Below are positions 4,264 to 57,821 of a DNA stretch of 64,000 bases, in pieces (position 1 is the first letter of the stretch; each line of letters opens with the position of its first letter). The stretch is taken from positions 124,001-188,000 of the IMG/VR virus record IMGVR_UViG_3300036770_003657. One strand, 5' to 3'. The position numbers and the translations under genes are program-made. The notes under the pieces are model-generated. The model had not been told where the DNA came from and made no database searches. It worked only from the letters and a program-made list of their open reading frames with translations.

Positions 4264-4272
4264 GGAACGACG

Positions 4273-4518
4273 ATGACGTTGCGCTGGAATATTGATTTTA
4301 AGCCCGCAGACGCAGATTTCTGCTATGTCGACACCTACACAACTCATAATTCTAAAACATTCTACGAGAATATTTTTTACTGTAAGCCAGTAAAATATGA
4401 TGTCGATAGCACCCTATTAAATTATAACAATAATAACAAGCTATTCTACTCAACCTATTGGCCAAATAACGATATAACTCGTCATGCTGTAAGCCAAGGT
4501 GGTAGAATAAGCAGATGA
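4273..4518 (+). CDS. Small hypothetical protein (81 aa)
   Basis: SD AAGGA before the ATG; fills the gap between genes; its TGA overlaps the giant gene ATG (ATGA). Confidence 0.55.
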   Translation: MTLRWNIDFKPADADFCYVDTYTTHNSKTFYENIFYCKPVKYDVDSTLLNYNNNNKLFYSTYWPNNDITRHAVSQGGRISR

Positions 4519-7500
4519 GTGTATTAAAGAGATATTTCCAAGGCGTACAAGGAGTCCAAGACGGTTGGCGCTCCATAATGATTGGCGAAAAGGGTGCCCA
4601 AGGTACTCAAGGCCTACAAGGTGACAGCGCAGTTGGTGGATTTTTCTTATGGGAACAAACTACACCAGCTGTAGTTTGGGAAATTCCTCATAACTTAGGA
4701 GCACGAATTGTAGTCGTGCAGTTGGCCAATACCGATGGTGAAAGTATTCAAGAAGGTTTACCAGGTAGTCCATATATAGAATTTATTGATTCTAGTAATT
4801 TAAAGGTATATTTTAGCACAGCTACAGCAGGATATGCAGCAATTACCAGTGGTGGTGGCTTACAGGGTATCCAAGGTATGCAGGGTATCCAAGGTATACA
4901 GGGTGATTTGGGACCACAAGGTATTCAAGGTCGTCAAGGTACACAAGGTTTACAGGGTATTCAGGGTCTAGGTTTTGTATGGCGTGGCCTTTGGAATATA
5001 AACGAAACTTATAATTTTAATGACGTAGTATACTATAATGGTGGTAGCTGGGTAGCCAAACAACCAAATAGTGGTCAAGCAGCTCCATTCCAAGGTAGCG
5101 CATATTGGGATATAATGACAGCCCAAGGACCACAGGGTATACAAGGTGTACAAGGTAGATTTGGTCCACAAGGACCACAAGGACCACAAGGAACACAGGG
5201 TTTACAAGGTGATTTAGGTATACAAGGTATACAAGGTATACAGGGTATTCAAGGTCGAAGCATTATTTGGAAAGGTTATTGGACTGACACTGATGAATAT
5301 TTTATCGGTGATATGGTATACTATAATGGTGGTAGCTGGGTTTCAACTAGAGATGCTAGTTTATCGGATCCAAACATTAATAAAGAGCCATATGTAGGCA
5401 GTCAATTTTGGGATAAGAGTACTAGCCAAGGTATTCAAGGTGTACAAGGCGTACAAGGTGTACAAGGCGTCCAAGGCGTACAAGGTGTACAAGGCGTCCA
5501 AGGTATACAGGGTGTTGGATTCCAATGGCGTGGTACTTGGAGTGCTACTGAAGAATATGATATTAACCATACAGTATACTATAACGGCTTTAGTTATGTA
5601 AGTTTAATAAGATTCAACACTGGAAATAGACCAGATGACCCAGCTCATGATGATAAATGGGATATTGTAGCAGCACAGGGTGTACAGGGTGTCCAAGGCG
5701 TACAGGGTGTACAAGGTGTCCAAGGTGTCCAAGGTGTACAAGGTGTACAAGGCGTTCAAGGTGTACAAGGCGTTCAAGGTGTACAAGGCGTACAAGGCGT
5801 ACAGGGTGTACAGGGTGTCCAAGGCGTACAGGGTGTACAGGGTGTACAGGGTGTACAGGGTATCCAAGGTTTCAGTATTTTATGGCAAGGACAGTGGCAA
5901 AATAATGTAACCTATAATACAAACCACGTTGTTTATTATGATGGCAACAGCTGGATAGCATTAGAGGATGGAATAGAAGGTATACATCCAGGACCAGAAG
6001 ATGATAACGGTTATTGGGGAAGAATGACCGCTCAAGGTATCCAAGGTCTACAAGGTGTCCAAGGTGTACAAGGTGTACAAGGTGTACAAGGTGTACAGGG
6101 CGTTCAAGGCGTACAAGGTGTACAGGGTGTACAGGGCGTACAAGGTGTACAGGGCGTACAAGGTGTACAGGGCGTACAAGGCGTACAGGGTGTACAGGGT
6201 GTACAGGGCGTTCAGGGCGTTCAGGGTGTACAAGGTGTACAAGGTGTACAGGGCGTACAAGGTGTACAAGGCGTACAAGGTGTACAGGGTGTACAGGGCG
6301 TACAAGGTGTACAAGGTGTACAAGGCGTACAGGGTGTACAGGGTGTACAGGGCGTACAAGGTGTACAGGGTGTACAAGGTGTACAGGGTGTACAAGGTGT
6401 ACAAGGTGTACAGGGCGTACAGGGCGTACAGGGTGTACAGGGTGTCCAAGGTGTACAAGGTGTACAAGGTGTACAAGGTATTCAAGGTATTCAAGGTCTT
6501 GGATTTAACTGGAAAGGTGTTTGGGATCCTAATACTACATATTTTACTAATGATGCAGTATTTTATAATGGTAGTGCTTATAATAGTCAATATGATTATA
6601 ATATAGGTAAACGTCCAGATCTAACATGGGACCCTGAAGCATGGAGTATGATTGCAAGCCAAGGTATTCAAGGCTTGCAGGGTGTACAAGGTGTACAAGG
6701 TGTACAAGGCGTACAGGGTGTACAAGGCGTACAGGGTGTACAGGGTGTACAAGGCGTACAGGGTGTACAAGGTGTCCAAGGTGTACAGGGTGTCCAAGGC
6801 GTTCAAGGTGTACAGGGTGTTCAAGGCAATCAAGGTGTACAAGGCGTACAAGGCGTACAAGGTGTACAAGGCGTTCAAGGTGTACAGGGTGTACAGGGCG
6901 TACAGGGTGTACAAGGTGTACAAGGTGTACAAGGTGTACAGGGTGTACAGGGTGTCCAAGGCGTACAAGGTGTCCAAGGTGTCCAAGGTGTACAAGGTGT
7001 ACAAGGCGTTCAAGGTGTACAAGGCGTTCAAGGTGTACAAGGCGTTCAAGGTGTACAAGGTGTACAGGGTATTCAAGGCTTTGGTATCATTTGGCGTGGT
7101 TTATACGATTTTGATACAAGATATTATCAAAATGAAGTTGTATTCTATAATGGCGCAAGCTGGATTGTAAAATATACTGGTGTAGAAGGGGTAACTCCAG
7201 GTAGTGAAAATCCAACTACTGTACCAGGACCAGAGTATAATGATACATTTTGGGAATTATTAGCTAGTCAAGGTATTCAAGGATTACAAGGTGTACAGGG
7301 TGTACAAGGTGTACAAGGTGTACAGGGTGTACAGGGTGTACAAGGTGTACAGGGTGTACAGGGTGTACAAGGCGTACAAGGTGTCCAAGGTGTACAAGGT
7401 GTCCAAGGTGTCCAAGGTGTACAAGGTGTACAAGGCGTACAGGGTGTACAGGGTGTACAGGGTGTACAGGGCGTACAGGGTGTACAAGGTGTACAGGGTG

Positions 7501-10500
7501 TACAAGGCGTACAAGGTGTACAGGGTGTACAGGGTTTACAGGGCGTTCAAGGCGTTCAAGGTGTACAGGGCGTACAAGGCGTTCAAGGTGTACAAGGTGT
7601 ACAAGGTGTACAGGGTGTCCAAGGCGTACAGGGCGTTCAAGGTGTACAAGGCGTTCAAGGTGTACAAGGTGTACAAGGTGTACAGGGCGTACAAGGCGTA
7701 CAGGGTGTACAAGGTGTACAAGGTGTACAGGGTGTACAAGGTGTCCAAGGTGTACAAGGTGTACAGGGTGTCCAAGGTGTACAGGGTGTCCAAGGTGTCC
7801 AAGGTGTACAAGGTGTACAAGGTGTACAAGGTGTACAGGGTGTACAAGGCGTACAGGGTGTACAAGGCGTACAGGGTGTACAAGGTGTTCAAGGTGTACA
7901 GGGCGTTCAAGGTGTACAAGGTGTCCAAGGTGTCCAAGGCGTTCAAGGTGTCCAAGGTGTCCAAGGCGTACAGGGTGTACAGGGTGTACAAGGCGTACAG
8001 GGTGTACAAGGTGTACAAGGCGTACAAGGTGTACAAGGAGTACAGGGTGTTCAAGGCGTCCAAGGTATCCAAGGTATTCAAGGTCGCGGACCTGTATGGC
8101 GCGGTGATTGGAGTTCTACTGAACAATATCAAACAGATGATATGGTATACTATGATGGTAATACTTTTATTGCTATCACAGGCGACGCTACAACAAGATT
8201 CAGTGGTGTAGAAACTAGACCATTATTAAGCCCAGTAGGAGCAGGTTATCCAGGTGATGTGAACGATACTTACTGGAATAGAATGACCGCTCAGGGTGTC
8301 CAAGGTTTACAGGGCGTACAAGGTGTACAGGGTGTACAGGGTGTACAAGGAGTACAAGGAGTACAAGGTGTACAAGGCGTACAAGGCGTTCAAGGTGTAC
8401 AGGGCGTTCAAGGTGTACAGGGCGTTCAAGGCGTACAGGGTGTACAAGGAGTACAAGGTGTACAAGGCGTACAGGGTGTACAGGGTGTACAAGGCGTTCA
8501 AGGCAATCAAGGTGTGCAAGGTGTACAAGGAGTACAGGGTGTACAGGGTGTACAAGGTGTACAGGGCGTTCAAGGTGTACAAGGTAATCAAGGTGTCCAA
8601 GGTGTACAAGGCGTACAGGGCGTACAAGGTGTACAGGGTGTCCAAGGCGTACAAGGTGTACAAGGTGTGCAAGGCGTACAAGGCGTACAAGGCGTACAAG
8701 GCGTACAAGGTATACAGGGTGTACAAGGCGTACAGGGTGTACAGGGTGTACAAGGCGTACAAGGTGTTCAGGGTGTACAAGGTGTACAGGGCGTACAGGG
8801 CGTACAGGGTGTCCAAGGTGTACAAGGTGTACAGGGCGTTCAAGGTGTACAAGGTGTCCAAGGTGTACAGGGTGTACAGGGTGTACAGGGTGTACAAGGC
8901 GTACAGGGTGTACAGGGTGTCCAAGGTGTCCAAGGTGTACAAGGTGTACAAGGTGTACAGGGTGTACAAGGCGTACAGGGTGTACAAGGCGTACAGGGTG
9001 TACAAGGCGTACAGGGTGTACAAGGCGTTCAAGGCAATCAAGGTGTCCAAGGTGTCCAAGGTGTTCAAGGTGTACAAGGTGTACAGGGCGTTCAAGGCGT
9101 TCAAGGCAATCAAGGTGTACAGGGCGTTCAAGGCGTACAAGGTGTACAAGGCGTACAAGGCGTACAAGGCGTACAAGGTGTACAAGGTGTACAGGGTGTT
9201 CAAGGTGTACAAGGTGTACAGGGCGTTCAAGGTGTACAAGGTGTACAAGGCGTACAGGGTATTCAAGGATTTGGATTACGTTGGAAAGGCGAGTACGATC
9301 CTTCCACAATTTACCAACAAAATGATGTAGTTTATTATGACGGTGATAGCTTTATAGCAGTATATCCAATTGACCATTATAATGCACCGTTTGGACAATT
9401 CAGTGGTCAAGTACCAGAATTTACTCCAGGCGATGTAAACACTACATATTGGAATAGAATAACAGCTCAAGGTATTCAAGGTGTACAGGGTGTTCAAGGT
9501 GTACAGGGTGTTCAAGGTGTACAGGGTGTCCAAGGTGTACAGGGTGTACAAGGTCTACAAGGCATTCAGGGACTACAAGGTGTACAGGGTGTACAGGGTG
9601 TTCAAGGCGTCCAAGGTGTTCAAGGCGTCCAAGGTGTACAAGGCGTCCAAGGTGTTCAAGGCGTCCAAGGTGTACAAGGCGTCCAAGGTGTTCAAGGTGT
9701 ACAGGGTGTACAGGGTGTACAGGGTGTACAGGGTGTACAGGGTGTACAAGGCGTTCAAGGTGTTCAAGGTGTACAGGGTGTACAAGGCGTACAGGGTGTA
9801 CAAGGTGTACAGGGTGTACAAGGCGTACAGGGTGTACAAGGTGTACAGGGTGTACAGGGTGTACAGGGCGTACAAGGTGTACAGGGCGTACAAGGCGTAC
9901 AAGGTGTACAAGGTGTACAAGGTGTACAAGGCGTCCAAGGTGTACAAGGTGTCCAAGGTGTCCAAGGTGTACAGGGTGTACAAGGCGTACAAGGCGTACA
10001 GGGTGTACAAGGCGTACAAGGTGTACAGGGTGTACAGGGTGTACAAGGTGTACAAGGCGTTCAAGGTGTTCAAGGTGTTCAAGGTGTTCAAGGTGTACAA
10101 GGCGTACAAGGTGTACAAGGCGTACAGGGTGTACAAGGCGTACAAGGTGTACAGGGTGTACAAGGCGTACAAGGTGTACAGGGTGTACAGGGTGTACAAG
10201 GTGTTCAAGGCGTCCAAGGTGTACAAGGTGTACAAGGTGTACAAGGTGTACAAGGTGTCCAAGGCGTACAGGGCGTACAAGGTATACAGGGCTTTGGTAT
10301 TATCTGGCGTGGAATGTATGATTTCACAACAAGATATTATCAAAACGAAGTTGTTTTCTACAATGGTGCCAGCTGGATAGTTCGTTATACTGGTGTAGAA
10401 GGATTAACACCTGGTATAGATGACCCAACTACAGTACCAGGACCAGAATATAATGACACATATTGGGAATTACTAGCCAGCCAAGGTATCCAAGGATTAC

Positions 10501-13500
10501 AAGGTGTACAAGGTGTACAGGGTGTACAAGGTGTACAGGGCGTTCAAGGTGTACAGGGCGTACAGGGTGTACAGGGCGTACAGGGTGTCCAAGGTGTACA
10601 GGGTGTACAGGGTGTACAGGGTGTACAAGGTGTACAAGGCGTTCAAGGTGTACAAGGCGTTCAAGGTGTTCAAGGTATACAAGGTGTACAAGGTGTACAA
10701 GGTGTACAGGGTGTACAAGGTGTACAAGGTGTACAAGGCGTTCAAGGTGTCCAAGGTGTCCAAGGCGTTCAAGGTGTCCAAGGTGTACAGGGTGTACAAG
10801 GTGTACAGGGTGTACAAGGTGTCCAAGGTGTCCAAGGTGTACAGGGTGTACAGGGTCAGCAAGGTATTCAAGGTCTTGGATTTAATTGGCGTGGAGACTG
10901 GAAAGTAGATGAAGTATATGCCAAGAACGATGCTGTAAGGTATGATGGAACATCTTGGGTTTCTCTAACAAAAGATAATATAGGTAATAACCCAAGGCTT
11001 ACAGAAGGTGTTGAATGGGACGTAATTGCTGCACAGGGTGTACAGGGTGTTCAAGGTATTCAAGGTGTACAGGGCGTACAGGGCGTACAAGGTGTACAAG
11101 GCGTTCAAGGTGTACAGGGTGTTCAAGGCATTCAAGGATTCAGCTTTGTTTGGAGAGGTGAATACGATCACACAGCTGATTATCAACAGAATGATGTAGT
11201 TTATTATAATGGCAGTAGTTTTGTAGCTATTTGGCCAATTAATTTTTATGATGTCATTGGTAGCCAATTCAGTGGTGAAGTACCAGAAGTTATCGGAGTA
11301 TACGGTGAGCCAGGAACATTAAACAGTACATATTGGGCAAGAATGTCAGCTCAGGGCGTACAAGGTGTACAGGGTGTACAAGGCGTACAGGGTGTACAAG
11401 GTGTACAGGGTGTACAAGGCGTACAGGGTGTACAAGGTGTACAGGGTGTACAAGGTGTACAGGGCGTACAAGGTGTACAGGGCGTACAAGGTGTACAGGG
11501 TGTTCAAGGTGTACAAGGTGTACAAGGCGTTCAAGGCGTACAGGGTGTACAAGGAGTACAAGGTGTACAAGGTGTACAAGGCGTTCAAGGCAATCAAGGT
11601 GTACAGGGCGTTCAAGGCGTACAAGGTGTACAAGGCGTACAAGGCGTACAAGGTGTCCAAGGTGTACAAGGCGTTCAAGGCGTTCAAGGCGTACAAGGTG
11701 TACAAGGTGTACAAGGTGTACAGGGTGTACAAGGTGTACAGGGCGTTCAAGGCGTGCAAGGTGTACAAGGTGTACAGGGTGTTCAAGGTGTACAAGGTGT
11801 ACAAGGTGTACAAGGTGTACAAGGCGTACAGGGTGTACAGGGTATACAGGGTGTCCAAGGTGTCCAAGGCGTACAGGGTATACAAGGTTTTGGTATTATT
11901 TGGCGTGGATATTACGACTTCAATACTACATATTTCCAAAACGAAGTTGTTTTCTATGATGGAAATAGTTGGATAGTAAAATACACTGGAGTAGAAGGTG
12001 TTCCTACAGGTATCAGTAATCCAGCAGCAGTTCCTGGACCAACCGATATTGATACTTGGTGGGAAAGATTAAGTAGCCAAGGTATTCAAGGTTTACAAGG
12101 CGTTCAAGGTGTACAAGGTGTACAAGGCGTTCAAGGTGTACAAGGCGTTCAAGGTGTACAGGGTGTACAGGGTGTACAAGGTGTACAAGGCGTACAGGGT
12201 GTACAGGGCGTTCAAGGCGTTCAAGGTGTACAGGGCGTACAAGGCGTACAGGGTGTACAAGGTGTACAAGGCGTACAAGGCGTACAAGGTGTACAAGGCG
12301 TACAAGGTGTACAAGGCGTTCAAGGTGTACAAGGTGTACAAGGCGTTCAAGGCGTACAAGGCGTTCAAGGCGTACAAGGCGTACAAGGTGTACAGGGTGT
12401 ACAAGGCGTCCAAGGCGTTCAAGGCGTCCAAGGCGTACAAGGTGTACAAGGCGTACAGGGTGTACAAGGCGTACAGGGTGTACAAGGTGTCCAGGGTATC
12501 CAAGGTATACAAGGCGGACAGGGTATACAAGGCGTACAGGGCGTTCAAGGTGTACAAGGTGTACAAGGCGTACAGGGTGTACAAGGCGTACAGGGTGTAC
12601 AAGGCGTACAGGGTGTACAGGGCGTACAGGGTGTACAAGGCGTACAGGGTGTACAAGGCGTACAGGGTGTACAAGGCGTTCAAGGCGTACAGGGCGTTCA
12701 AGGTGTCCAAGGTGTACAGGGTGTACAGGGTGTACAAGGTGTCCAAGGTGTACAGGGTGTACAAGGTGTACAAGGTGTACAGGGTGTACAAGGTGTCCAA
12801 GGTGTACAAGGACAACAAGGTATTCAAGGCGGCGGTGTAACTTGGAAAGGCATTTGGAATTCAACAACTAATTACATTGAAAATGATGCAGTATTTTACA
12901 ATGGTAATTCTTGGATCAGCGTATTAGAACCAAATATAGATAATGTACCTAATTTAATGTCAATTTATTGGGACATGCTTGCTAGCCAAGGTATTCAAGG
13001 CTTGCAAGGCGTACAGGGTGTACAGGGTGTACAGGGCGTTCAAGGTGTACAGGGCGTTCAAGGTGTACAGGGCGTTCAAGGTGTACAGGGCGTTCAAGGC
13101 GTACAGGGTGTACAGGGCGTACAAGGTGTACAGGGTGTACAGGGTGTACAGGGTGTACAGGGTGTACAGGGTGTACAGGGTGTACAGGGCGTACAGGGCG
13201 TACAGGGCGTACAGGGCGTACAAGGTGTACAGGGTGTACAGGGTGTACAAGGTGTACAAGGCGTACAAGGCGTACAGGGCGTTCAAGGTGTACAGGGCGT
13301 ACAGGGCGTTCAAGGTGTACAAGGTGTACAGGGTATTCAAGGTGTACAGGGTATTCAAGGTGTAGGATTAATATGGAAAGGTCAGTGGAGTGATTCAGTA
13401 TCTTACATAGCCAACGACATTGTATTTTACGATGGCAGTGCTTATATTTCAGTTCAGTCAACTAACCTAAATAATAATCCAACAATTGAAGATAGATCAA

Positions 13501-16500
13501 CTGAATTTACAACGCCTGGAACTTATACTTGGATAGCACCTCCAGGAGTTACCAGTGTAAGTGCTGTAGCAGTTGGTGGTGGATCTAGACCACAAATAAT
13601 AGGTAGTGGATTCAGCGCCAAGAGTTATGGTGGTGGCGGTGGTGGTTTAGGTTATAAGAATAATATACCAGTCGTTCCTGGCCAAGCTTATACAGTAGTA
13701 GTTGGTAGTGGAGCAGCCACAGGCACATATGGTGATGGTGGTGATAGCTACTTTATCAGTTCAATTACAGTAAAAGGTGGCGGAGCTACTGGCAGCACAG
13801 GTGGTACTTATGTAGGTGATGGCGGTGGTAGCGGTGGTAACGGTGGTGCACCAAACGGAAATTCAAGTGGCGGCGCAGGTGATGGCAGTGCTACATCAGG
13901 TGGTGGTGGTGGTGCAGGTGGTTATAGTGGCAACGGTGGCGTTGGCGGAACTATGTTGGTTGACAGTGGTAATGGAGCCAATTTTGGTGCTAACGGCAGT
14001 GGTGGCGGTGGTGCTGGTGGTGGCGGAAGAAATAGTCACGGTGGCGGCGGTGGCGGTGGTGTTGGTATCTATGGCGAAGGAGACAGTGGACTTGCCAATA
14101 CTACTGCTTATGTACCAAACGTAGGTGGCTGGGGCGGCAATGGTGGTAGTGGTGGTACTACTGGTGGTACTGGAACTCAATCAGGTGTTAATGGTGGTGG
14201 CGGCCTATACGGTGGTGGTGCTGGTGGTGGCTGGGCTGGATATGGTGATGCTGCTGGTGGTGGTGCAGTAAGAATCATATGGGGTGCAGGACGTAGTTTC
14301 CCAAGCACAAACGTCAGTACTGCTAGTGATTTTGTTGAAACATCTACCAATGTTCAATACTGGCAGCGATTTACCAGTCAAGGTATACAGGGCGTACAAG
14401 GTCTTCAAGGTGTACAGGGCGTACAGGGCGTACAGGGCGTACAGGGCGTACAGGGTGTACAAGGCGTACAGGGTGTACAAGGCGTACAAGGTATCCAAGG
14501 TGTACAAGGTGTACAGGGTATCCAAGGTGTACAGGGTGTACAAGGTGTACAGGGTGTACAAGGTGTACAGGGTGTACAAGGTATACAGGGTGTACAAGGT
14601 ATACAGGGTGTACAGGGTGTACAGGGCGTACAGGGCGTACAGGGTGTACAGGGTGTACAAGGTATCCAAGGTGTAAGTATAACTTGGAAGGGAGTTTATG
14701 ATAATGCCGCTCAATATAGCCAAAATGACGTAGTATTTGAAAACGGCAGTAGTTGGATAGCAGTTTATCCATATACAAGTGGAACGTTTAGTGGCATAAG
14801 ACCAGGTGAAACAGTAGGTTGGATCACATATTGGAATATGATGACCAGCCAAGGTATTCAAGGTGTACAGGGTGTACAGGGTGTACAAGGTATTCAAGGT
14901 GTACAGGGTGTACAAGGTATTCAAGGTGTACAGGGTGTACAGGGTATACAAGGTGTACAAGGCGTACAAGGTATTCAAGGTGTCCAGGGTGTACAGGGTA
15001 TACAAGGTGTACAAGGCGTACAAGGTATTCAAGGTGTACAGGGTGTACAAGGTATTCAAGGTGTACAGGGTATCCAAGGTGTACAGGGTGTACAGGGTAT
15101 ACAAGGTGTACAGGGTGTACAGGGTATACAAGGTGTCCAGGGTGTACAGGGTGTACAGGGTATACAAGGTGTACAGGGTGTACAGGGTATTCAAGGTGTA
15201 CAGGGTGTACAGGGTATTCAAGGTGTACAAGGCGTACAAGGTATCCAAGGCGGTCAAGGTATTCAAGGTGTACAGGGTGTACAAGGTATCCAAGGCGTCC
15301 AAGGTGTACAAGGTATTCAAGGTGTACAGGGTGTACAAGGCATCCAAGGTGTACAAGGTGTACAAGGTATTCAAGGCGGTCAGGGTATACAAGGTGTACA
15401 AGGTATACAGGGTGTCCAAGGCATCCAAGGTGTACAAGGTATTCAAGGCTTCCAAGGCACCAAGGGTGAGGGCTTTACATTCTTGGGAGATTGGAGTCCT
15501 GTAACAGAATATATTAAGAATGACAGTGTATACTATAATGGTTCAAGCTATACAAGCACTTACGGTGATATAACATATGCTGGAGGTGGATTTGCTAATA
15601 TTAATCAACGTCCAGGTGAACTAGTAACAATATCAAATGTTAGCCTAACTGCTAGTGGTGTATTCAGTTGCGATAGTGTAAACCTATATAAAGCAGAAGT
15701 TATTAGAGTAAGTGGTACAGTTCCAGCAGGATTTACAATTGAGAATCCAGATAGTCCTGCTCAAGCTCCAACTTACTATACAGCTGGTCAACAAGTTGAT
15801 AATGATTATTATGTAATCACATATCCAAATAATCCAACTACAACCTTTACATTAGGACGTAGTCAATTCTCTGTAGATCCAATTAGTACAACTGGTACAG
15901 GCAGTTTAAGTGGGTTAACATTTAAGGCTGTTCCATGGTTAATTATTAGTGCTCAAGGTATTCAAGGATTACAAGGTGTACAAGGTATACAGGGTGTACA
16001 AGGTATACAGGGTGTACAAGGTATACAGGGCGTACAGGGTGTACAAGGTATACAAGGTGTACAAGGTGTACAAGGTATTCAAGGTGTACAAGGTATTCAA
16101 GGTGGTCAGGGCATACAAGGTGTACAAGGTATTCAAGGTGTACAAGGTATACAGGGTATTATTGGTACTCCAGGTGGTTATACAGCAAATTATAATTGGG
16201 ATAGTAGCACAGCAGTTGCCGATCCAGGTGTAGGTAATGTAACTATTGAGCGTAGTTGGACAGATCAAACTGCTGGTCAAGTTTATATCAATCTTGACAA
16301 GTATGACGCAGATGGACAAGATCGTGCAGCGTGGGTCAATGCTATCAAGTTCTTTGGTAGCGCAAGTAGCTACTATGGTGTTATTACAATTATGCCAGAA
16401 GGTGCTACAAATCAGCGCTGGACCGGTGTTATCACCGTAGTAAATGATCTCAGTACACATTTTAGACTACAGCTAACCTTTGTTGATAGTCAAGGATCAG

Positions 16501-19500
16501 CCCCAACAGTTGGACAAAAATTAGGCGTCAGCTTCCAGCCAGCTGGTCAACAGGGTATCCAAGGCGTACAAGGTATCCAAGGCGTACAAGGTATCCAAGG
16601 TGTACAAGGTGTACAAGGTATCCAAGGTGGTCAAGGCATCCAAGGTGTACAGGGTGTACAAGGTATACAAGGCGTACAAGGCGTACAAGGTATCCAAGGC
16701 GTACAAGGTATCCAAGGTGTACAGGGTGTACAGGGTATACAGGGTGTACAAGGCGTACAAGGCATACAAGGTGGTCAAGGCATACAAGGCGTACAGGGTG
16801 TACAGGGTATCCAAGGTGTACAAGGTGTACAGGGTATACAGGGCGTACAGGGTGTACAAGGTATCCAAGGTGGTCAAGGCATCCAAGGTGTACAGGGTGT
16901 ACAGGGTATACAGGGCGTACAGGGTGTACAAGGTATACAAGGTGGTCAAGGTATACAAGGTGTACAGGGTGTACAGGGTATACAGGGCGTACAGGGTGTA
17001 CAAGGTATCCAAGGTGTACAAGGTATACAGGGTATTCAAGGTTCAAGTATCACGTGGAGAGGCCAATACAGTCCAACAACTGTATACAATACAAACGACG
17101 TAGTATTTGAAAATGGTCAAAGCTGGGTTGGTGTAAGAGGTACAGGTAATAGTCAAACATTAACTAGTGTAGCACACAGCGGTAGTGGTGTGTTTACTTG
17201 TGCTGCTGCTACATTATTTGTTGGTGACCAAGTTACTGTAAGTGGAACAAATGGTGGCAACGTAGTATTACCAGGATACAGTGCTAGTGGTACAAATTAT
17301 TATATTATAGCTACAAATGGTACTACACAATTTACTTTAAGTACTACACTAAACGGATCTGCTGCTACAGCTACCACAGGTACTACAGTCAGTGGATCAA
17401 TGATATTTGTTGTACCAACAGGATTTGGAAATGTAAGACCTAACCTAACACAAACTAATCATTGGAACTTAATGACTAGCCAAGGTATCCAAGGTGTACA
17501 GGGTGTACAGGGTGTACAAGGTATCCAAGGTGTACAGGGTGTACAGGGTATACAAGGTGGTCAAGGCATACAGGGTGTACAAGGTGTACAGGGTGTACAA
17601 GGCATACAAGGTGGTCAAGGTATCCAAGGTGTACAAGGTATACAGGGCGTACAAGGTGTACAAGGTATCCAAGGTGTACAGGGTATTCAAGGTATTACTG
17701 GTTTAGGTATTACTTGGAAAGGAACTTGGACTAGTTCAACAGTTTACAATAGCAATGACGTAGTATTCTACAACGGCAATAGCTGGATTGGTGTACGTGG
17801 AACAGGTAACAGTGTAGCATTAAGTGGTGTAAGTATCGGGGCTAGTGGCGTAATATCCTGTACTGCTACAAGCTTGCCAGCAGGATTCCAAGTAGGTGAT
17901 CAAGTTCTAGTTGCAGGCATTAATAGTGGAACTGGTGCATTACCAAGTTACAGCGCCAGCGGCACTTACTATTATATTATAGCTACAAATGGTAGCACAC
18001 AATTTACCATAAGTACAACAGCTGGTGGTGCTGCTGCTAGTACAACTTCTGGTACTGTAAGTGGTGCAATGACCTTTACTGTAGCAACAGGTTTTGTCAA
18101 TGTCATTCCAAACTTAACTAATACAAACCACTGGAACCAAATGACCAGCCAAGGTATCCAAGGCATCCAAGGTGTACAAGGTGTACAGGGCATACAAGGT
18201 GTACAAGGTGTACAGGGTATACAAGGTGTACAAGGACGTCAAGGTGTACAGGGTGTACAAGGTATCCAAGGTGTACAAGGTGTACAAGGTATACAAGGTG
18301 GTCAAGGCATTCAAGGTGTACAGGGCGTACAAGGTATACAGGGTGTACAAGGACGTCAAGGTGTACAGGGTGTACAGGGCATACAGGGTGTACAAGGCGT
18401 ACAAGGTATACAGGGTGTACAAGGCGTACAAGGTATACAAGGTGGTCAAGGCATTCAAGGTGTACAGGGTGTACAAGGTATACAGGGTGTACAAGGTGTA
18501 CAAGGTATCCAAGGCGTACAGGGTCAGCAAGGTATTCAAGGTTCAGGCTTTAAGTGGCGTGGTGTTTGGGCTCCACAATTTGACTATGCTGTTAGTGATA
18601 TGGTATCACACTTGGGTAGCACATATGTTAGCTTAACTCAGTATCTTCCACAAACACTAGCAAATGTTCAAATTATATCTGCTGGTAAAATAACTTGTAA
18701 CACTCCAACTAATGCATTAAATCCAGGTGATGGTCTTTATGCTATAGGTGTTAAAACTGGAACAGGGTCTATAACTGGTTATAATAGTGCAGGAACAAAT
18801 TATTTCATAACAACAGTTAGCAATAATGCTGGCACTACTACATTAACTTTAAGTGCCAATTATAATCCGTATGTAACAGTTAGTACCACAGCAGGTACAA
18901 GCACTGGTATTACTTTCTACGCACCAACTTTTGTACCAACTAGCTTTACTAAAGATCAATATGATAATGGTCAATCAAGTGTAGGTGCTTGGCAGTTAGC
19001 AGGTTCACAGGGTATTCAGGGTGTACAAGGCGTACAAGGTGTACAAGGTATACAGGGCGTACAAGGTATACAGGGCGTACAAGGAGTACAGGGTATACAA
19101 GGTGTACAAGGTATACAGGGTATTCAAGGTGCAAGCCCAACTTGGAGAGGAACATATACAAGTGGTGTAGCATACAATACTAACGATATGGTATTCCATA
19201 ATGGTAATACATATATGGCCATTTATGGTACAGGTAATACTGTAGCATTAAGTGGTGTAAGTATTGGAGCTAATGGAACATTTACTTGTACAGCAGCAAG
19301 CCCAGCTCTTGTAGTTGGTAATGGTGTTAGAATCGTGGGCGCTGCCAGTGGTACTGGTAGTATTAGTGGTTACACAGAAGGTGCAACTTATTATATCACA
19401 GCTACAAACGGTAGTACAAGCTTTACTTTAAGTTCCACAATCGGCGGTGCAGCAGTAACAACTACTGCTGGTACAAGCACAGGATTAACATTCCAACATC

Positions 19501-22500
19501 CAGTAAGTTTTGCTAATCAAGTTCCAGCAACAGGTCAACCCCCAGTAGTTAATACAACTTACTGGAATCAGATGACCAGCCAAGGTATCCAGGGTGTACA
19601 GGGTGTACAGGGTGTACAAGGTATCCAAGGTGTACAAGGCGTACAAGGTATACAAGGTGGTCAAGGTATACAGGGTGTACAGGGTATACAGGGCGTACAA
19701 GGTATACAAGGTATTCAAGGCTTTAGTGTAACTTACAGAGGACAATACAATCCTGCTACAGTATACACACAGAACGATGTGGTATTTGAAAATGGACAAA
19801 GCTGGATTGCTATATGGCCAATTACAACAAGTACATTTAGTAATGTAAGACCAGGAGTAACAGCAGGTTGGGCTAACTATTGGGGCAACTTAACTAGCCA
19901 AGGTATACAGGGTGTACAAGGTGTACAAGGTGTACAAGGTATTCAAGGTGTACAAGGACGTCAAGGTGTACAAGGTATACAAGGTGTACAAGGCGTACAA
20001 GGTATTCAAGGTGTACAAGGTGTACAGGGTATACAGGGATTAAGTATCAATTGGAAAGGCCAGTTTAATCCTGCTACAGCATATAGTCAAAACGATGTAG
20101 TATTTGAAAACGGCGCAAGCTGGATAGCAAAATGGCCATATGCTAGTGGAACCTTTACAGGAATCAGACCAGGAGTAACAGTAGGCTGGGCTACATACTG
20201 GGATCAAATGACCAGCCAAGGTATCCAAGGTGTACAGGGTGTACAGGGTATCCAAGGTGTACAGGGTGTACAGGGTATCCAAGGTGTACAGGGTGTACAA
20301 GGTATACAGGGTGTACAAGGTGTACAAGGTATCCAAGGTGGTCAAGGTATACAAGGCGTACAAGGTATTCAAGGTGTACAAGGCGTACAAGGTATTCAAG
20401 GTGTACAGGGTGTACAAGGTATACAGGGCTTTAGTGTAACTTATAGAGGAATCTATAACAATGCTACAGTTTATACTCAAAATGATGTAGTATTTGAAAA
20501 TGGACAAAGTTGGATAGCAGTGTATCCAATTACAACAGGTACATTTAGTGGTCAACGTCCAAGTTTAGCAAATACAACATATTGGGGTCAATTAACAAGT
20601 CAAGGTATACAGGGTGTACAAGGTGTACAAGGTATACAAGGTGGTCAAGGTATCCAAGGTGTACAAGGTGTACAAGGTATACAGGGCGTACAAGGTGTAC
20701 AAGGTATCCAAGGTGTACAGGGTGTACAGGGTATACAGGGTGTACAAGGACGTCAAGGTGTACAGGGCATACAAGGTGTACAGGGTGTACAAGGTATACA
20801 AGGTGTACAAGGTGTACAAGGTATCCAAGGTGGTCAAGGTATCCAAGGCGTACAAGGTATTCAAGGTGTACAAGGTGTACAGGGTATCCAAGGATTTAGC
20901 GTAACTTACAGAGGAATATATAATAACGCCACAGTTTACACTCAAAATGATGTAGTATTTGAAAATGGACAAAGTTGGATAGCAGTATATCCAATAACTA
21001 GTGGAACATTTAGTGGTCAACGTCCAAGTTTAGCAAACACAACATATTGGGGTCAGTTAACAAGTCAGGGTATACAAGGTGTACAGGGTGTTCAAGGTAT
21101 TCAAGGTGGTCAAGGTATACAAGGTGTACAAGGTATACAAGGTATCCAAGGTGGTCAAGGTATTCAAGGTGTACAGGGTGTACAGGGTATACAGGGTGGA
21201 CAAGGTATTCAAGGTCGTCAAGGTATACAAGGTATCCAAGGTGGACAAGGTATACAGGGTATTCAAGGTGGTCAAGGTATCCAAGGTGTACAAGGTGTAC
21301 AAGGTATCCAAGGTGGACAAGGTATCCAAGGTGTACAAGGCGTACAAGGTATACAGGGTGGACAAGGTATACAAGGAGTACAGGGTGTACAAGGTATACA
21401 AGGTGGACAAGGTATTCAAGGTATCCAAGGTATCCAAGGATTTAGTGTTACATATCAAGGTGTATACAATAATGCTACAGTGTACACTCAAAATGATGTA
21501 GTATTTGAAAATGGACAAAGCTGGATTGCAATATATCCAGTAACAACAGGAACATTTAGTGGAATACGTCCAGGTGTAACAGTAGGTTGGGCTACATATT
21601 GGGGTAGATTAAGTCAACAAGGTATACAGGGTATACAGGGTGGACAAGGTATACAGGGTGTACAAGGTATCCAAGGTATCCAAGGTGGACAGGGCATACA
21701 GGGTGTACAAGGTATCCAAGGTATCCAAGGAGGCCAAGGTATTCAAGGTATCCAAGGTGGCCAAGGTATACAGGGTGTCCAAGGTGTTCAAGGTATACAG
21801 GGTGGACAAGGTATACAAGGTAGACAGGGTATACAGGGTCAACAAGGACTACAGGGTACACAGGGTCAACAAGGTATCCAAGGACAGCAAGGTACACAGG
21901 GTATACAGGGTCAACAAGGACTACAGGGTACACAAGGACAACAAGGTATCCAAGGTCAACAAGGTACACAGGGTATACAGGGTCAACAAGGATTACAGGG
22001 TACACAAGGACAACAAGGTATACAAGGTCAACAAGGTACACAGGGTATACAGGGTCAACAAGGTACACAAGGACTACAGGGTACACAAGGACAACAAGGT
22101 ATACAAGGACAGCAAGGTACACAGGGTATACAGGGACAACAAGGTACACAAGGTCAGCAAGGTATACAGGGTACACAAGGTCAGCAGGGGACACAAGGTG
22201 TTCAAGGATTCCAAGGATTCCAAGGTTATCAAGGTGTACAGGGTGAACAAGGTATACAGGGTGTACAAGGTATTCAAGGATTCCAAGGATTTATTGGTGA
22301 TCAAGGTACAACAGGTTCACAAGGTACAACAGGTGATACAGGCTTACAGGGATTACCAGGACCACAAGGTACAGATGGACAAACTGGAGCACAAGGTCCA
22401 CAAGGTCCACAAGGTTTAGATGGAACAATTGGAACATTAAGTTTAGCAACATTCAAGAGCGTAGTAGCAGGTGCCGCAAACTTCCAAGACTTCCAAACAG

Positions 22501-22517
22501 CAGTAGCAGCACTATAA
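4515..22517 (+). CDS. Giant collagen-like (Gly-X-Gln)n fibre protein with repeated Trp-rich bead modules (6000 aa)
   Basis: Uninterrupted 18-kb ORF with Gly at every third residue in the tracts ([12 protein letters not shown]). Tracts are separated by 25 W(R/K)G.[WY]..Y..ND.V.(Y/F).G.S[WY]...P...YW modules, one of which holds a Gly-rich domain. Confidence 0.9.
5430..22220 (+). repeat. Degenerate 9-bp coding tandem repeats (GG[T/C] [G/A]T[A/T/C] CA[A/G])n in about 25 tracts
   Basis: Directly visible, e.g. ggtgtacaa/ggtgtacag/ggcgtacaa; variation is mostly at third codon positions. Confidence 0.95.
21828..22043 (+). repeat. 72-bp higher-order repeat x3 ([24 protein letters not shown])
   Basis: Units at 21828-21899, 21900-21971 and 21972-22043 encode the same 24 aa. 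Confidence 0.85.
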
Positions 22518-25424: not shown

Positions 25425-26168
25425 ATGCTAGAATTAGGAATGTATTGCCTATGTTATGTAGGCCGAGAACCAAAAAATTATCAGTATAACCAACACAACT
25501 TAATGTGCGGGTCTGTTAATTATAATCAATTTGACGTTTTAGAAATGCAACGTCGAGGATTCTTAATGGATCATGTGGGTGAAAACATAAGTCATATGAA
25601 TAATGACTTTGGTAGTCTTACAGGATTGTATTGGGTTTGGAAAAATGCTGATCATGACTACAAAGGAACTAATACATATCGTATTTTTTGGAATGAAGAT
25701 TTTAATCTTAGACCAAATACTGTATATATTCCTGAAGCAAAAGATATAGTTACTGCTATAAAAGGATATGCTCCTAATGTAAACAGTGTATATGATCATT
25801 TTAGTCATTGTCATAATAGTTTAGGGTGGCAATTATTATATGGACTTGCTGGTGATCGACGTATACCTATTAGTATAGACATGATTGATGACCTTAGGAA
25901 TTACAAATATCTCATTCCTTTCCACATGTTTACAGCAGATAGAGTAACCTTTAATCGTATTTGTGAAATATTGTTTCAAATATTGTTTGAATTTCATGCT
26001 AATTATCAATACTTTTTACCAGAAATTCATAAACGTACTCAACAAGTAAGATTTTATGATTTTTTTGGTGAAAGAATATTACATATTATCCTAACAAATA
26101 ACTATTATTTTTTAGGAAATACAGATATAAGACATTTAAATATACTGGATATAGACCATCATGCTTGA
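25425..26168 (+). CDS. DUF4422-like putative glycosyltransferase
   Basis: GENISHMNNDFGSLTGLYWVWKN resembles the DUF4422 signature (DNISxxNxxxxELTxxYWxWKN); later GERIL motif. Confidence 0.65.
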   Translation: MLELGMYCLCYVGREPKNYQYNQHNLMCGSVNYNQFDVLEMQRRGFLMDHVGENISHMNNDFGSLTGLYWVWKNADHDYKGTNTYRIFWNEDFNLRPNTVYIPEAKDIVTAIKGYAPNVNSVYDHFSHCHNSLGWQLLYGLAGDRRIPISIDMIDDLRNYKYLIPFHMFTADRVTFNRICEILFQILFEFHANYQYFLPEIHKRTQQVRFYDFFGERILHIILTNNYYFLGNTDIRHLNILDIDHHA

Positions 26169-27414: not shown

Positions 27415-27420
27415 TAGATA

Positions 27421-37207: not shown

Positions 37208-37220
37208 TATTAGAACAAAT

Positions 37221-37244
37221 AAAAAGGGGCTTAGGCCCTTTTTT
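37221..37244 (+). terminator. Intrinsic (bidirectional-type) terminator
   Basis: AAAAAGGGGC-TTAG-GCCCTTTTTT after the tube gene. Confidence 0.85.
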
Positions 37245-37281
37245 ATTGACTTTTTATAATAATAGCATATTTTGAACTATA

Positions 37282-37288: not shown

Positions 37289-37293
37289 ATATT

Positions 37294-57813: not shown

Positions 57814-57821
57814 GATAGTTT

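What the first reader, a model, noticed from the sequence alone, without database searches (positions are those of the whole stretch)
4969..21617. Twenty-five Trp/Tyr-rich bead modules in fixed register along the fibre
Seen: every bead begins right after GIQ/GVQ/GTK-G with xxW(R/K)G.[WY] (Y or F in a few), carries Y..ND.V.(Y/F)(Y/E)NG.S[WY], and ends P...YW...(S/A)Q back into collagen. Subfamilies are visible: [13 protein letters not shown] at about 7078, 10290 and 11886, and FSVTYRG at about 19718, 20427, 20892 and 21439. Established: the aromatic pattern resembles CBM5/12 (ChtBD3-type) carbohydrate-binding modules. Inference: a multivalent glycan-binding array and/or re-registration nodes for the triple helix.
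Basis: partly seen in the sequence, partly recalled or inferred. Interest (0 to 1): 0.7.

Follow-up and report, generated by a model that had tools for sequence, protein, structure and literature searches.

The report
Beaded giant collagen fibre of a jumbo phage
A 400-kb bacteriophage encodes a 6,000-residue collagen-like fibre protein, about a micrometre long if fully extended, that is interrupted 25 times by small domains with the fold of chitin-binding modules; these most likely act as trimer nodes that keep the very repetitive triple helix in register, and sugar binding is possible but unproven.

Summary
ORF 4515-22517 (+) encodes 6,000 aa, about 60% of it Gly-X-Y (1,209 triplets, 813 of them GVQ), with exactly 25 copies of a 54-73 aa module. 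Six copies are enlarged by inserted domains.

The window lies in a 399,796-bp IMG/VR jumbo T4-like myovirus, and the gene sits in its neck and tail module.

The module has the CBM5/12 fold:
- AF2 model pLDDT 90.7; TM 0.73 and rmsd 1.1 Å to the Vibrio chitin deacetylase CBM12.
- Each bead scores below the Pfam cut-off, but the summed score passes it.

The nearest structural matches also include the same fold in solved phage and CIS fibre proteins. One of these, A-1(L) gp33, uses it as a structural joint.

The conserved Trp/Tyr pattern maps to the fold's core and to predicted inter-chain contacts. The CBM5 sugar-binding aromatic pair and the CBM12 Trp are not conserved.

A trimer model of collagen-bead-collagen passes its controls (0.62 against 0.00).

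Two other phage contigs carry orthologues of 6,249 and 6,482 aa with about 25 beads. Bead order is collinear in the N-terminal two thirds and diverges in the last third.

Verdict: a new variant of the collagen-like phage fibre. The CBM5/12 likeness is supported, the registration-node role is plausible, and glycan binding is untested.

The parts
4515..22517 (+). Giant collagen-like fibre gene, 6,000 aa (P0001)
   Evidence: A single open frame. Pfam Collagen E 1.9e-302 and 1.7e-160 on the two halves. The start [10 protein letters not shown] is conserved in two orthologues.
4629..4856 (+). N-terminal globular domain (aa 39-114), candidate virion-attachment domain
   Evidence: Non-collagen segment. 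Matches phrog_21918 at E 2e-8 and viral hypothetical clusters. It is 68% and 44% identical in the orthologues.
4965..5126 (+). Bead 1 (aa 151-204)
   Evidence: AF2 pLDDT 90.7 with the CBM5/12 fold.
5253..5429 (+). Bead 2 (aa 247-305)
5511..5678 (+). Bead 3 (aa 333-388)
5868..6035 (+). Bead 4 (aa 452-507)
6495..6662 (+). Bead 5 (aa 661-716)
7077..7271 (+). Bead 6 (aa 855-919), GFGIIWRG subfamily
8082..8294 (+). Bead 7 (aa 1190-1260)
9267..9470 (+). Bead 8 (aa 1585-1652)
10290..10484 (+). Bead 9 (aa 1926-1990), GFGIIWRG subfamily
10872..11036 (+). Bead 10 (aa 2120-2174)
11136..11354 (+). Bead 11 (aa 2208-2280)
11886..12080 (+). Bead 12 (aa 2458-2522), GFGIIWRG subfamily
12828..12989 (+). Bead 13 (aa 2772-2825)
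13359..14381 (+). Bead 14 (aa 2949-3289), with a glycine-rich domain of about 290 aa inserted in the variable loop
   Evidence: Pfam Gly_rich_2 PF21722 at 31.8 bits, above the 24.3 cut-off. phrog_4474 at E 2e-47. The bead core flanks the insert.
14670..14852 (+). Bead 15 (aa 3386-3446)
15465..15956 (+). Bead 16 (aa 3651-3814), with a beta-barrel insert
   Evidence: It is 74% identical to its positional orthologue in contig C20.
16182..16544 (+). 121-aa non-bead globular module (aa 3890-4010)
   Evidence: Has no bead motif and no Pfam or PHROG hit above noise. Only viral hypothetical clusters match it. It is 81% and 43% identical at the same position in the orthologues.
17040..17483 (+). Bead 17 (aa 4176-4323); the CBM5/12 core is split by a beta-barrel insert of about 95 aa (aa about 4211-4305)
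   Evidence: AF2 pLDDT 84.2. VIA-align matches model residues 6-37 plus 130-148 to CBM5/12 domains at Z about 6. Residues 36-130 match small beta-barrels at Z 5-6.8.
17700..18152 (+). Bead 18 (aa 4396-4546), with a beta-barrel insert
18540..19001 (+). Bead 19 (aa 4676-4829), with a beta-barrel insert; the most divergent bead
   Evidence: Bead profile E 5.4e-7.
19128..19583 (+). Bead 20 (aa 4872-5023), with a beta-barrel insert
19719..19901 (+). Bead 21 (aa 5069-5129), FSVTYRG subfamily
20037..20219 (+). Bead 22 (aa 5175-5235)
20427..20603 (+). Bead 23 (aa 5305-5363), FSVTYRG subfamily
   Evidence: It is 98% aa but only 89% nt identical to bead 24.
20892..21068 (+). Bead 24 (aa 5460-5518), FSVTYRG subfamily
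21438..21620 (+). Bead 25 (aa 5642-5702), FSVTYQG
21621..22439 (+). Terminal collagen tract of 91 triplets with a different composition (GIQ/GGQ/GQQ/GTQ, then GPQ and charged triplets)
22440..22514 (+). Conserved non-collagen C-terminal tail (25 aa), candidate trimerisation or nucleation element
   Evidence: Nearly identical in both orthologues. The role is inference.
22532..25372 (+). Neighbouring fibre gene (946 aa) that carries the same beta-barrel module as beads 16-20
   Evidence: Sequence read directly. Matches phrog_692 and phrog_697 structural proteins.
25425..28200 (+). Three genes just downstream: DUF4422 glycosyltransferase-like, TPR protein and GT2 glycosyltransferase
   Evidence: Pfam. 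Any link to the fibre is untested.
28628..31560 (-). gp15-like tail sheath stabiliser, and a 434-aa structural protein with a C-terminal CBM5/12-like motif
   Evidence: PF16724 at E 2.9e-27. phrog_11591 and phrog_5073. Weak bead match at window 30373-30504.

Best explanation
The gene encodes a homotrimeric collagen-like fibre of a jumbo T4-like myovirus. Its (GVQ/GIQ)n triple helix is cut into 26 segments of 10-109 triplets by 25 in-line domains with the CBM5/12 fold, and by one unrelated 121-aa module.

Shown:
- the gene and its 25 modules;
- the modules' fold;
- the collagen signature;
- the phage structural-gene context;
- conservation of the whole architecture, and of bead order, in related phages.

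Inferred mechanism:
- At each bead the three chains leave the helix, fold into three small beta domains packed round the fibre axis, and re-enter the helix through fixed junction motifs (GIQ-G[FL][GS]xxW[RK]G and [TA][SA]Q-GIQ).
- The beads therefore act as trimerisation and registration nodes, and probably as hinges. They let a nearly Pro-free, sequence-degenerate helix of about 3,600 residues fold segment by segment without slipping.
- The extended length would be about 1 micrometre: 3,627 residues at 0.286 nm each, plus the beads.
- The bead-specific variable loop carries all the inserted domains. Together with the divergent C-terminal third, it is the likely site of any host-surface or polysaccharide contact. 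Adhesion is thus a secondary, multivalent and weak function rather than the reason for the conserved aromatic pattern.
For: Gene and repeats.

Collagen: PF01391 at E 1.9e-302 and 1.7e-160.

Fold:
- The AF2 bead model has pLDDT 90.7.
- Foldseek hits are CBM5/12 domains (4ny2 at TMq 0.73 and rmsd 1.1 Å; also 1ed7, 2d49, SmChiB). They also include phage and CIS fibre proteins: 8kec at TMq 0.80-0.82, 9rkv, 8fqc and 7b5h_AE.
- VIA-align gives Z about 6 for the split core of bead 17.
- The bead profile against PDB sequences finds 7b5h_AE at E 5e-5 and 1ed7 at E 0.0047.

Trimer:
- Three copies of aa 127-231 score ipSAE 0.62 against a best control of 0.00. In the tool's calibration this mark was reached by 21 of 30 solved homomers and 0 of 23 monomers.
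- The runs agree in at least 94% of contacts, and partner pLDDT is at least 82.
- Contacts run along both collagen flanks with a one-residue stagger.
- Between beads they involve W156, G158, N169, V171, Y173, G176-S178, V180, K182 and D199-T202. These include the conserved W6, G8, N19, Y/F23, G26 and S28 of the motif.

Structural precedent: the A-1(L) gp33 joint domain, whose residues 139-165 match the bead profile, binds baseplate wedges. All3316 is Cis13 of the Anabaena CIS.

Phage fibre context:
- The gp15-like gene, sheath, tube and terminase lie nearby.
- The collagen-bead-collagen unit matches PHROG 5073 'tail fiber protein' at E 1.3e-13.

Selection rather than slippage:
- Every 99-mer is unique and 16 (15 listed) different 9-mers encode GVQ.
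- Beads 23 and 24 are 98% aa but 89% nt identical.

Conservation:
- Orthologues of 6,249 and 6,482 aa have 26 bead-profile hits each, the same number as the window gene with its 25 beads.
- Bead order is collinear with C20 over the first 18 non-collagen segments (aa 39-4010), at about 60-82% identity per module.
- The last third diverges, and the C-terminal tail is conserved.
Against: - No experiment or virion proteome shows that the protein is in the particle, forms a triple helix or is extended.
- The trimer result is a model's confidence. Collagen-like peptides resemble solved structures, so a pass may partly reflect memory.
- The trimer model shows few bead-to-bead contacts, so the beads might hang as loosely packed lobes rather than tight nodes.
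- Only 10 of 1,209 triplets contain Pro, so helix stability is unknown.
- Loops are almost as conserved between positional orthologues as the cores are (70% against 76%). That does not mark them as fast-evolving specificity sites.
- Bacterial homologues sit next to GH88 genes, which hints that the family may have a real carbohydrate role.
- Short-read contigs could not confirm the tract lengths.
Confidence: 0.6

Rival explanations
1. One reading: the 25 beads are working carbohydrate-binding modules. The fibre is then a multivalent lectin array that captures host cells or particles through many weak sugar contacts.
For: - The beads have the CBM5/12 fold and a profile-level likeness to that family.
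- Fourteen of 25 beads keep one aromatic at the first position of the CBM5 binding pair.
- The bead loop hosts extra domains, and diversity is greatest in the distal third, as expected for a receptor-binding part.
- Bacterial collagen-plus-bead homologues lie directly upstream of GH88 glycoside hydrolase genes in two unrelated contigs.
- Tandem bead arrays occur in phage fibre clusters with Mtd_N genes.
Against: - The second aromatic of the Y-W/W-W pair is never present, and 11 beads have neither.
- The CBM12 Trp687 position aligns to Ile, Gln or Val.
- The conserved aromatics coincide with core positions (Y265 and W299 of CjCBM5) and with predicted chain-chain contacts.
- In A-1(L) gp33 the domain that holds this fold binds the baseplate wedges; All3316 is the baseplate chain Cis13.
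- The A-1(L) neck-fibre CBM showed no binding to its host.
Confidence: 0.3
2. The beads are docking sites for other phage proteins, such as side fibres, enzymes or capsid and tail surfaces. The giant protein would then be a scaffold or tether rather than a free adhesin.
For: - The fold binds baseplate wedges in the A-1(L) gp33 joint domain, and it occurs in the baseplate chain Cis13.
- The same beta-barrel module is shared among three fibre genes of this phage.
- Bead identity is maintained position by position between orthologues. That fits position-specific partners.
Against: No partner has been identified. Twenty-five distinct docking sites on a flexible fibre have no precedent, and nothing here tests the idea.
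Confidence: 0.08
3. The array is an assembly or annotation artefact: a low-complexity repeat region mis-assembled into one long open frame.
For: - The record comes from a metagenome.
- Logan unitigs of the best-matching run break up in the collagen tracts.
- Other frames also stay open inside the repeats.
Against: - All 99-mers are unique and the longest exact repeat is 92 nt.
- One frame stays open across all 25 distinct beads.
- Two independent contigs carry collinear orthologues of similar size with the same start and the same C-terminal tail.
Confidence: 0.02

Closest known systems
CBM5/CBM12 chitin-binding modules (Pfam PF02839, SMART ChtBD3), e.g. B. circulans ChiA1 ChBD 1ed7, the V. cholerae chitin deacetylase CBM 4ny2 and the S. 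marcescens ChiB CBM5
   Same: Same small beta fold (TMq 0.62-0.74, rmsd 1.1-2.2 Å; Z about 6). Same core Tyr and Trp, and the same Y..(N/G)D.V.Y.G..Y signature.
   Different: - Single copies score below the Pfam cut-off.
- An extra N-terminal xxW(R/K)G strand is present.
- The surface aromatic pair and the Trp687 equivalent are not conserved.
- The domains are embedded in-line in a trimeric collagen helix rather than appended to an enzyme.
- The loop that carries the binding Trp in CBM12 is here variable in length and hosts whole inserted domains.
CBM5/12-like domains of solved phage and CIS fibre proteins: cyanophage A-1(L) short tail fibre gp33 (8kec/8ke9), Anabaena CIS Cis13/All3316 (7b5h), Agrobacterium phage 7-7-1 tail fibres (9rkv) and the phage Milano receptor-binding complex (8fqc)
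   Same: These are the best sequence and structure matches (E 5e-5 to 7b5h_AE; TMq 0.80-0.82 to 8kec). The fold sits in trimeric fibre proteins of contractile tails.
   Different: The matches found here show one such domain per chain, in A-1(L) gp33 within the baseplate-binding joint domain. They lack collagen and are not repeated 25 times.
Collagen-like phage tail fibre proteins (PHROG 5073 'tail fiber protein', PHROG 1806 'collagen like minor tail'; from memory, prophage collagen-like proteins of E. coli and streptococcal phage hyaluronidases)
   Same: Gly-X-Y tracts in phage fibre genes. The collagen-bead-collagen unit itself matches PHROG 5073 at E 1.3e-13.
   Different: The scale differs by an order of magnitude: 6,000 aa, 1,209 triplets and 25 beads. 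None of the 150 best bead-containing representatives is longer than 4,341 aa. The collagen-rich ones have at most about 12 beads by HMM stretches.
Bead-chain neck fibre of cyanophage A-1(L) (gp82-gp81-gp80)
   Same: A long, flexible, beaded fibre on a myovirus, about 100 nm with 16 beads. Its genes lie with the neck genes and it ends in a carbohydrate-binding module.
   Different: It is built from about 16 separate trimers joined head to tail. It is neither a single polypeptide nor collagen, and its bead fold is different.
Non-collagenous trimerisation and register domains of animal collagens (e.g. the type IX NC2 domain; Boudko and Bachinger, cited in PMC8968730), and interrupted bacterial collagens such as S. 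pneumoniae PclA
   Same: Globular or coiled domains between collagen segments that set chain register and nucleate folding. [quoted passage not shown]
   Different: The folds are unrelated. Here one module type recurs 25 times, and the helix lacks Pro/Hyp.
Collagen-like surface fibrils of giant viruses and spores (Mimivirus fibrils, B. anthracis BclA, Pasteuria fibres; from memory)
   Same: Collagen-like adhesive fibres on a particle surface, with glycosyltransferase genes near the fibre genes.
   Different: Those are short (tens to about 150 nm) and have a single terminal globular domain. The repeats here have no Thr or Lys glycosylation sites.

Membership tests
CBM5/12 (Pfam PF02839 CBM_5_12) | HMM score above the gathering cut-off (26.2 bits) | tested here: inconclusive
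   Single beads score 15-22.5 bits, at E 6e-5 to 0.02. Summed over the two halves of the protein the scores are 81.6 and 53.2 bits, above the whole-protein cut-off, but no single stretch passes.
CBM5/12 (Pfam PF02839 CBM_5_12) | Small three-stranded antiparallel beta fold of the ChBD type | tested here: met
   AF2 pLDDT 90.7. Foldseek gives TMq 0.73 and rmsd 1.1 Å to 4ny2, and 0.62-0.64 to 1ed7, 2d49 and 2rts. VIA-align gives Z 5.7-6.1.
CBM5/12 (Pfam PF02839 CBM_5_12) | Two conserved core aromatics (Y265 and W299 in CjCBM5) | tested here: met
   Y16 and W48 are invariant in A1 and align to Y662 of 1ed7 and to the C-terminal Trp. Their core role is taken from PMC8449059.
CBM5/12 (Pfam PF02839 CBM_5_12) | Surface-exposed ligand-binding aromatics: the Y-W/W-W pair in CBM5, Trp687 in CBM12 | tested here: not met
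   By alignment, the first pair position is Y or W in 14 of 25 beads and the second is never aromatic. The Trp687 position aligns to Ile, Gln or Val, or lies in a variable loop. No coordinates were available to check for other exposed aromatics.
CBM5/12 (Pfam PF02839 CBM_5_12) | Binding to chitin, cellulose or another glycan | not testable with these tools
   Needs expressed protein and binding assays.
Collagen triple-helix repeat proteins (PF01391) | Long uninterrupted Gly-X-Y tracts | tested here: met
   1,209 triplets in 26 tracts of 10-109 triplets. PF01391 at E 1.9e-302.
Collagen triple-helix repeat proteins (PF01391) | Three chains in a one-residue-staggered triple helix | tested here: inconclusive
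   The model gives ipSAE 0.62 against a best control of 0.00, with staggered i/i-1/i-2 contacts on both flanks. No physical measurement exists, and only 10 triplets contain Pro.
Phage tail or neck fibre proteins | Sequence match to phage fibre families, and location in the virion structural module | tested here: met
   PHROG 5073 at E 1.3e-13, plus PHROG 9851 and 26419. The neighbours are fibre-like structural genes, the gp15-like gene, sheath, tube and TerL.
Phage tail or neck fibre proteins | Presence in the virion and attachment to the neck or baseplate | not testable with these tools
   The phage is uncultured (IMG/VR record).
Gly_rich_2 domain (PF21722), the insert of bead 14 | HMM score above the cut-off | tested here: met
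   31.8 bits against a cut-off of 24.3, at E 1.9e-7. phrog_4474 at E 2e-47.
T4 fibritin (wac)-type whiskers | Alpha-helical coiled-coil shaft with a C-terminal foldon | tested here: not met
   The shaft is collagen-like, not coiled coil. Only the gene's position near the neck genes and a short conserved C-terminal tail are analogous.

The most novel reading that the evidence does not exclude
A clade of jumbo phages carries a single-polypeptide, micrometre-scale, segmented collagen fibre, longer than the virion itself. In it, 25 CBM5/12-fold trimer nodes solve the register problem of a Pro-free, nearly homopolymeric (GVQ)n triple helix. The position-specific beads and the divergent distal third turn the fibre into a long-range 'fishing line' for host capture. 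This would be the longest viral fibre protein described. It would also be a natural design rule for making very long recombinant collagens.
Probability: 0.3. Interest if true: 0.78.

Novelty: new variant of a known kind. Interest (0 to 1): 0.58.

Why it matters
- **Scale.** If the fibre is real and extended, it is about ten times longer than the phage and giant-virus fibres recalled here. That raises the question of what a 400-kb phage gains from micrometre-long appendages, such as reach, entanglement in biofilm matrix, or capture of hosts at low density.
- **CBM5/12 annotations in phages.** The fold recurs as a structural building block of phage and CIS fibres. This matters for annotation, because 'CBM_5_12' hits in phage fibre genes should not be read as chitin binding.
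- **Collagen engineering.** Alternating short trimer nodes with Pro-free Gly-X-Y tracts suggests a natural way to keep very long repetitive triple helices in register. That is of direct interest for recombinant collagen materials.
- **Spread of the family.** The bead profile finds 8,476 cluster representatives at E up to 1e-3, including bacterial proteins next to GH88 genes. An undescribed collagen-plus-bead architecture is therefore widespread.

Tried and rejected
- **GenBank phages.** Megablast of the upstream 4.6 kb and tblastn of aa 3640-4340 found nothing. tblastn of aa 1-520 found only one bead-sized hit, in a crAss-like phage. No close cultured relative is available. The gp15-like neighbour is at most 36.5% identical to phages Phosso, PA5oct and Atu_ph07. 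The Phosso locus has no collagen gene nearby.
- **Read support.** The best run, a subsurface metagenome holding 0.79 of the sampled words, is kept only as short Logan unitigs. These break up in the repeats and leave holes, so tract lengths could be neither confirmed nor refuted.
- **Identity of the 90-aa insert.** Foldseek on the whole bead 17 gave only weak two-domain matches at TMq about 0.35. VIA-align gave generic small beta-barrels at Z 5-6.8, below the level that indicates kinship.
- **N-terminal domain and 121-aa module.** Pfam and PHROGs gave nothing informative. The Atlas returned only viral hypothetical clusters.
- **Literature.** Searches for collagen-like with jumbo phage, CBM5, ChtBD3 or chitin-binding with tail fibre found no description of this architecture.
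- **Loops as fast-evolving specificity sites.** Core and loop identity between positional orthologues differ little (76% against 70%), so this idea is not supported.
- **Periodic bead spacing.** Tract lengths of 10-109 triplets show no regularity.

Full report
**1. What is there**

The window is bases 124,001-188,000 of a 399,796-bp IMG/VR virus record that CheckV rates complete. The genes around the finding show a jumbo T4-like myovirus:
- a gp15-like tail sheath stabiliser (PF16724, E 2.9e-27);
- a 1,121-aa sheath protein, two tube paralogues, a head-tail adaptor and the large terminase.

The nearest cultured relatives of the gp15-like protein are Sinorhizobium phage Phosso, the Pseudomonas PA5oct group and Agrobacterium Atu_ph07, at only 32-37% identity.

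The finding lies inside one ORF, 4515-22517 (+), of 6,000 codons.
- About 60% of the protein is Gly-X-Y: 1,209 triplets, of which 813 are GVQ and 212 GIQ. Only 10 triplets contain Pro.
- Pfam Collagen scores E 1.9e-302 and 1.7e-160 on the two halves.

**2.

A profile of 19 of them (A1) retrieves exactly 25 copies in this frame, with E from 2.6e-27 to 5e-7. Residues G1, G8, Y16, V22, G26, P41, W48 and Q54 are invariant.

The stated subfamilies exist: beads 6/9/12, and beads 21/23/24/25 together with 15 and 22. Beads 17/18/20 and 8/11 form further groups. Overall the beads are old and diverse, with a mean core identity of 39%.

- GIQ precedes 23 of 25 beads although it makes up only 17.7% of triplets.
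- The exit motif is [TA][SA]Q followed mostly by GIQ.

Six beads are composite.
- Bead 14 carries a Gly_rich_2 domain (PF21722, 31.8 bits; phrog_4474, E 2e-47).
- Beads 16-20 each carry a domain of about 90 aa at the same loop.

There is also a 121-aa non-bead module (aa 3890-4010), an N-terminal domain (aa 39-114) and a short C-terminal tail.

**3. Not an artefact**

- Despite the 9-nt periodicity, every 99-mer of the gene is unique and the longest exact repeat is 92 nt. Sixteen (15 listed) different 9-mers encode GVQ.
- Beads 23 and 24 are 98% identical in protein but 89% in DNA. The repeats are therefore kept by selection on the protein and are not recent slippage.
- Two other IMG/VR contigs (3300022752_000018 and _000020) carry orthologues of 6,249 and 6,482 aa. 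I read each by joining two overlapping loci of the same contig; the overlaps were 100% identical.
- The orthologues have the same N-terminus, 26 bead-profile hits each (as the window gene gives for its 25 beads) and a nearly identical C-terminal tail.
- Many other viral contigs end inside such genes.
- Short-read unitigs could not verify the tract lengths.

**4. What the bead is**

- Each bead hits Pfam CBM_5_12 below the cut-off, at 15-22.5 bits against 26.2. The summed scores of 81.6 and 53.2 bits exceed it.
- Against PDB sequences, the bead profile finds Cis13/All3316 of the Anabaena contractile injection system (E 5e-5). It also finds the ChiA1 chitin-binding domain (E 0.0047), Vibrio chitin deacetylase CBMs and the cyanophage A-1(L) short tail fibre.
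- The AF2 model of bead 1 is confident (pLDDT 90.7).
- Its structural neighbours are almost only CBM5/12 domains: 4ny2 at TMq 0.73 and rmsd 1.1 Å, SmChiB, ChiC and ChiA1.
- The same fold also appears in phage fibre proteins: A-1(L) 8kec at TMq 0.80-0.82, phage 7-7-1, phage Milano and the CIS baseplate.
- In bead 17 (pLDDT 84.2), model residues 6-37 plus 130-148 superpose on CBM5/12 domains at Z about 6. Residues 36-130 form a separate small beta-barrel with only generic matches at Z 5-6.8.

**5. What the aromatic residues do**

The CBM5 literature separates two groups of aromatics (PMC8449059):
- two core aromatics, Y265 and W299 in CjCBM5;
- the surface Y-W/W-W pair that binds chitin.

By alignment, bead Y16 and W48 are the core pair. 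At the surface-pair position, 14 beads have a single Y or W, 11 have none, and the second position is never aromatic. The position of the CBM12 binding Trp (Trp687 of ChiA1; its role is from memory and from the papers listed) aligns to Ile, Gln or Val, at the edge of the loop that varies most in length.

In a model of three copies of aa 127-231, the interface score is 0.62 against 0.00 for the best of three controls.
- In the tool's calibration this mark was reached by 21 of 30 solved homomers and 0 of 23 monomers.
- The runs agree in at least 94% of contacts and partner pLDDT is at least 82.
- Contacts run along both collagen flanks with the one-residue stagger of a triple helix.
- Between beads they involve W156, G158, N169, V171, Y173, G176-S178, V180, K182 and D199-T202. 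Several of the conserved motif residues are among these.

The Trp/Tyr pattern is thus best read as a fold-plus-interface signature, not as a sugar-binding site. This rests on a model and on alignments, and I had no coordinates to inspect the surface.

**6. Precedent for a structural role**

In phage A-1(L) the matching part of gp33 (residues 139-165) lies in the 'joint' domain, which binds the baseplate wedges. Receptor binding maps to other parts of that protein. All3316 is Cis13, a baseplate protein of the Anabaena CIS whose N-terminal 100 residues contain the fold. The distal CBM of the A-1(L) neck fibre did not bind the host.

**7. Evolutionary pattern**

Against the C20 orthologue, the first 18 non-collagen segments (aa 39-4010: the N-terminal domain, the beads up to bead 16 and the 121-aa module) are mostly collinear, at about 60-82% identity per module. 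The exceptions are one local swap and a few segments without a positional match. Collagen spacer lengths differ between the two genes. The last third has different bead types and extra modules. Beads therefore have individual, position-specific identities that are maintained, and the distal third is the variable part, as in other phage fibres. Loops are only slightly less conserved than cores between positional orthologues (70% against 76%).

**8. Spread of the module**

The profile finds 8,476 cluster representatives at E up to 1e-3, and 210 at E up to 1e-30. Single proteins have up to 44 matched stretches. Many hits are 20-48% collagen with 5-12 beads.

Contexts differ:
- a 4,341-aa tandem-bead protein without collagen lies in a phage fibre cluster with Mtd_N genes;
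- two bacterial collagen-plus-bead proteins of about 1,700 aa each lie directly upstream of a GH88 gene.

The GH88 neighbourhood is the best indirect hint of a carbohydrate role.

Within this phage, the module also occurs in a 4,801-aa ORF elsewhere in the genome and in the 434-aa structural protein next to the gp15-like gene. The collagen-bead-collagen unit matches PHROG 5073 'tail fiber protein' at E 1.3e-13. None of the 150 best representatives is longer than 4,341 aa. My literature searches found no description of the architecture.

**9. Most likely mechanism**

The steps below are inference unless a call is cited.
- Three chains form a collagen-like fibre. At 0.286 nm per residue (the established rise of the triple helix), the 3,627 collagen residues give about 1.04 micrometres, plus the beads.
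- A nearly homopolymeric (GVQ)n helix can mis-register freely. Globular trimer nodes every 10-109 triplets, with fixed entry and exit motifs, would nucleate and lock each segment and provide hinges. This is analogous to the register-setting non-collagenous domains of animal collagens (cited in PMC8968730).
- The conserved 25-aa C-terminal tail may start folding, as the foldon does in T4 fibritin. The gene's place beside the neck genes recalls wac, but the shaft is not a coiled coil.
- Any host contact is more likely to come from the bead-specific loops, the inserted Gly-rich and barrel domains, and the divergent distal third.

**10. Verdict**

- The CBM5/12 likeness is confirmed at fold level, with incomplete family membership: the binding residues are not met and the single-domain score is below the cut-off.
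- Glycan binding is neither shown nor excluded.
- The registration-node role is plausible and consistent with the trimer model.
- This is a new, extreme variant of the collagen-like phage fibre, conserved in at least three related jumbo phages.

Noticed in passing
window 53093-61254 (+): Seven consecutive ORFs, six of which match the Radical_SAM family. One of them also has a SPASM domain. They lie in a block of very low GC (25-31%). A run of radical-SAM enzymes like this is unusual for a phage, and its purpose is unknown.
   Followed up: partly
window 25425-28200 (+): A DUF4422 glycosyltransferase-like gene, a TPR protein and a GT2 glycosyltransferase lie shortly downstream of the fibre gene, after the 946-aa fibre ORF. 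This recalls the virus-encoded glycosylation of collagen-like fibrils in giant viruses. However, the GVQ repeats lack the usual Thr or Lys acceptor sites.
   Followed up: no
window 22532-25372 (+), P0155 aa about 283-365; also L010 (G000:C1:47000-66999, minus strand): The beta-barrel module of about 90 aa inserted in beads 16-20 recurs, outside any bead, in the neighbouring 946-aa fibre protein. It also occurs next to a bead in a 4,801-aa non-collagen ORF of the same genome. It is a shuffled module among this phage's fibre genes.
   Followed up: partly
G000:C1:53467-62628 (minus strand; outside the window, locus L010): A second giant ORF of 4,801 aa has no collagen. It contains at least six CBM5/12-like motifs by the Pfam model and two by the bead profile.
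   Followed up: partly
window 30256-31560 (-), P0154: The 434-aa structural protein next to the gp15-like gene ends in a CBM5/12-like motif (bead profile E 0.0022; PHROG 5073 match). It could be a short neck or collar fibre.
   Followed up: partly
L088 8001-14440 and L009 10001-17126: In two unrelated bacterial contigs, a collagen-plus-bead protein of about 1,700 aa is immediately followed by a Glyco_hydro_88 gene. This conserved pairing suggests a polysaccharide-related role for the bacterial members.
   Followed up: no
window 13300-17500: About 14-19% of the sampled 31-mers of this stretch occur in many freshwater, river and lake metagenome runs from other studies. These are presumably the GVQ-coding words. 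If so, similar collagen-like genes with the same codon choices are common in freshwater viromes.
   Followed up: no
window 36581-38376 (+): Two adjacent tail-tube paralogues of 208 and 360 aa follow an unusually long sheath protein (1,121 aa) that has a flagellin-IN-motif insert.
   Followed up: no
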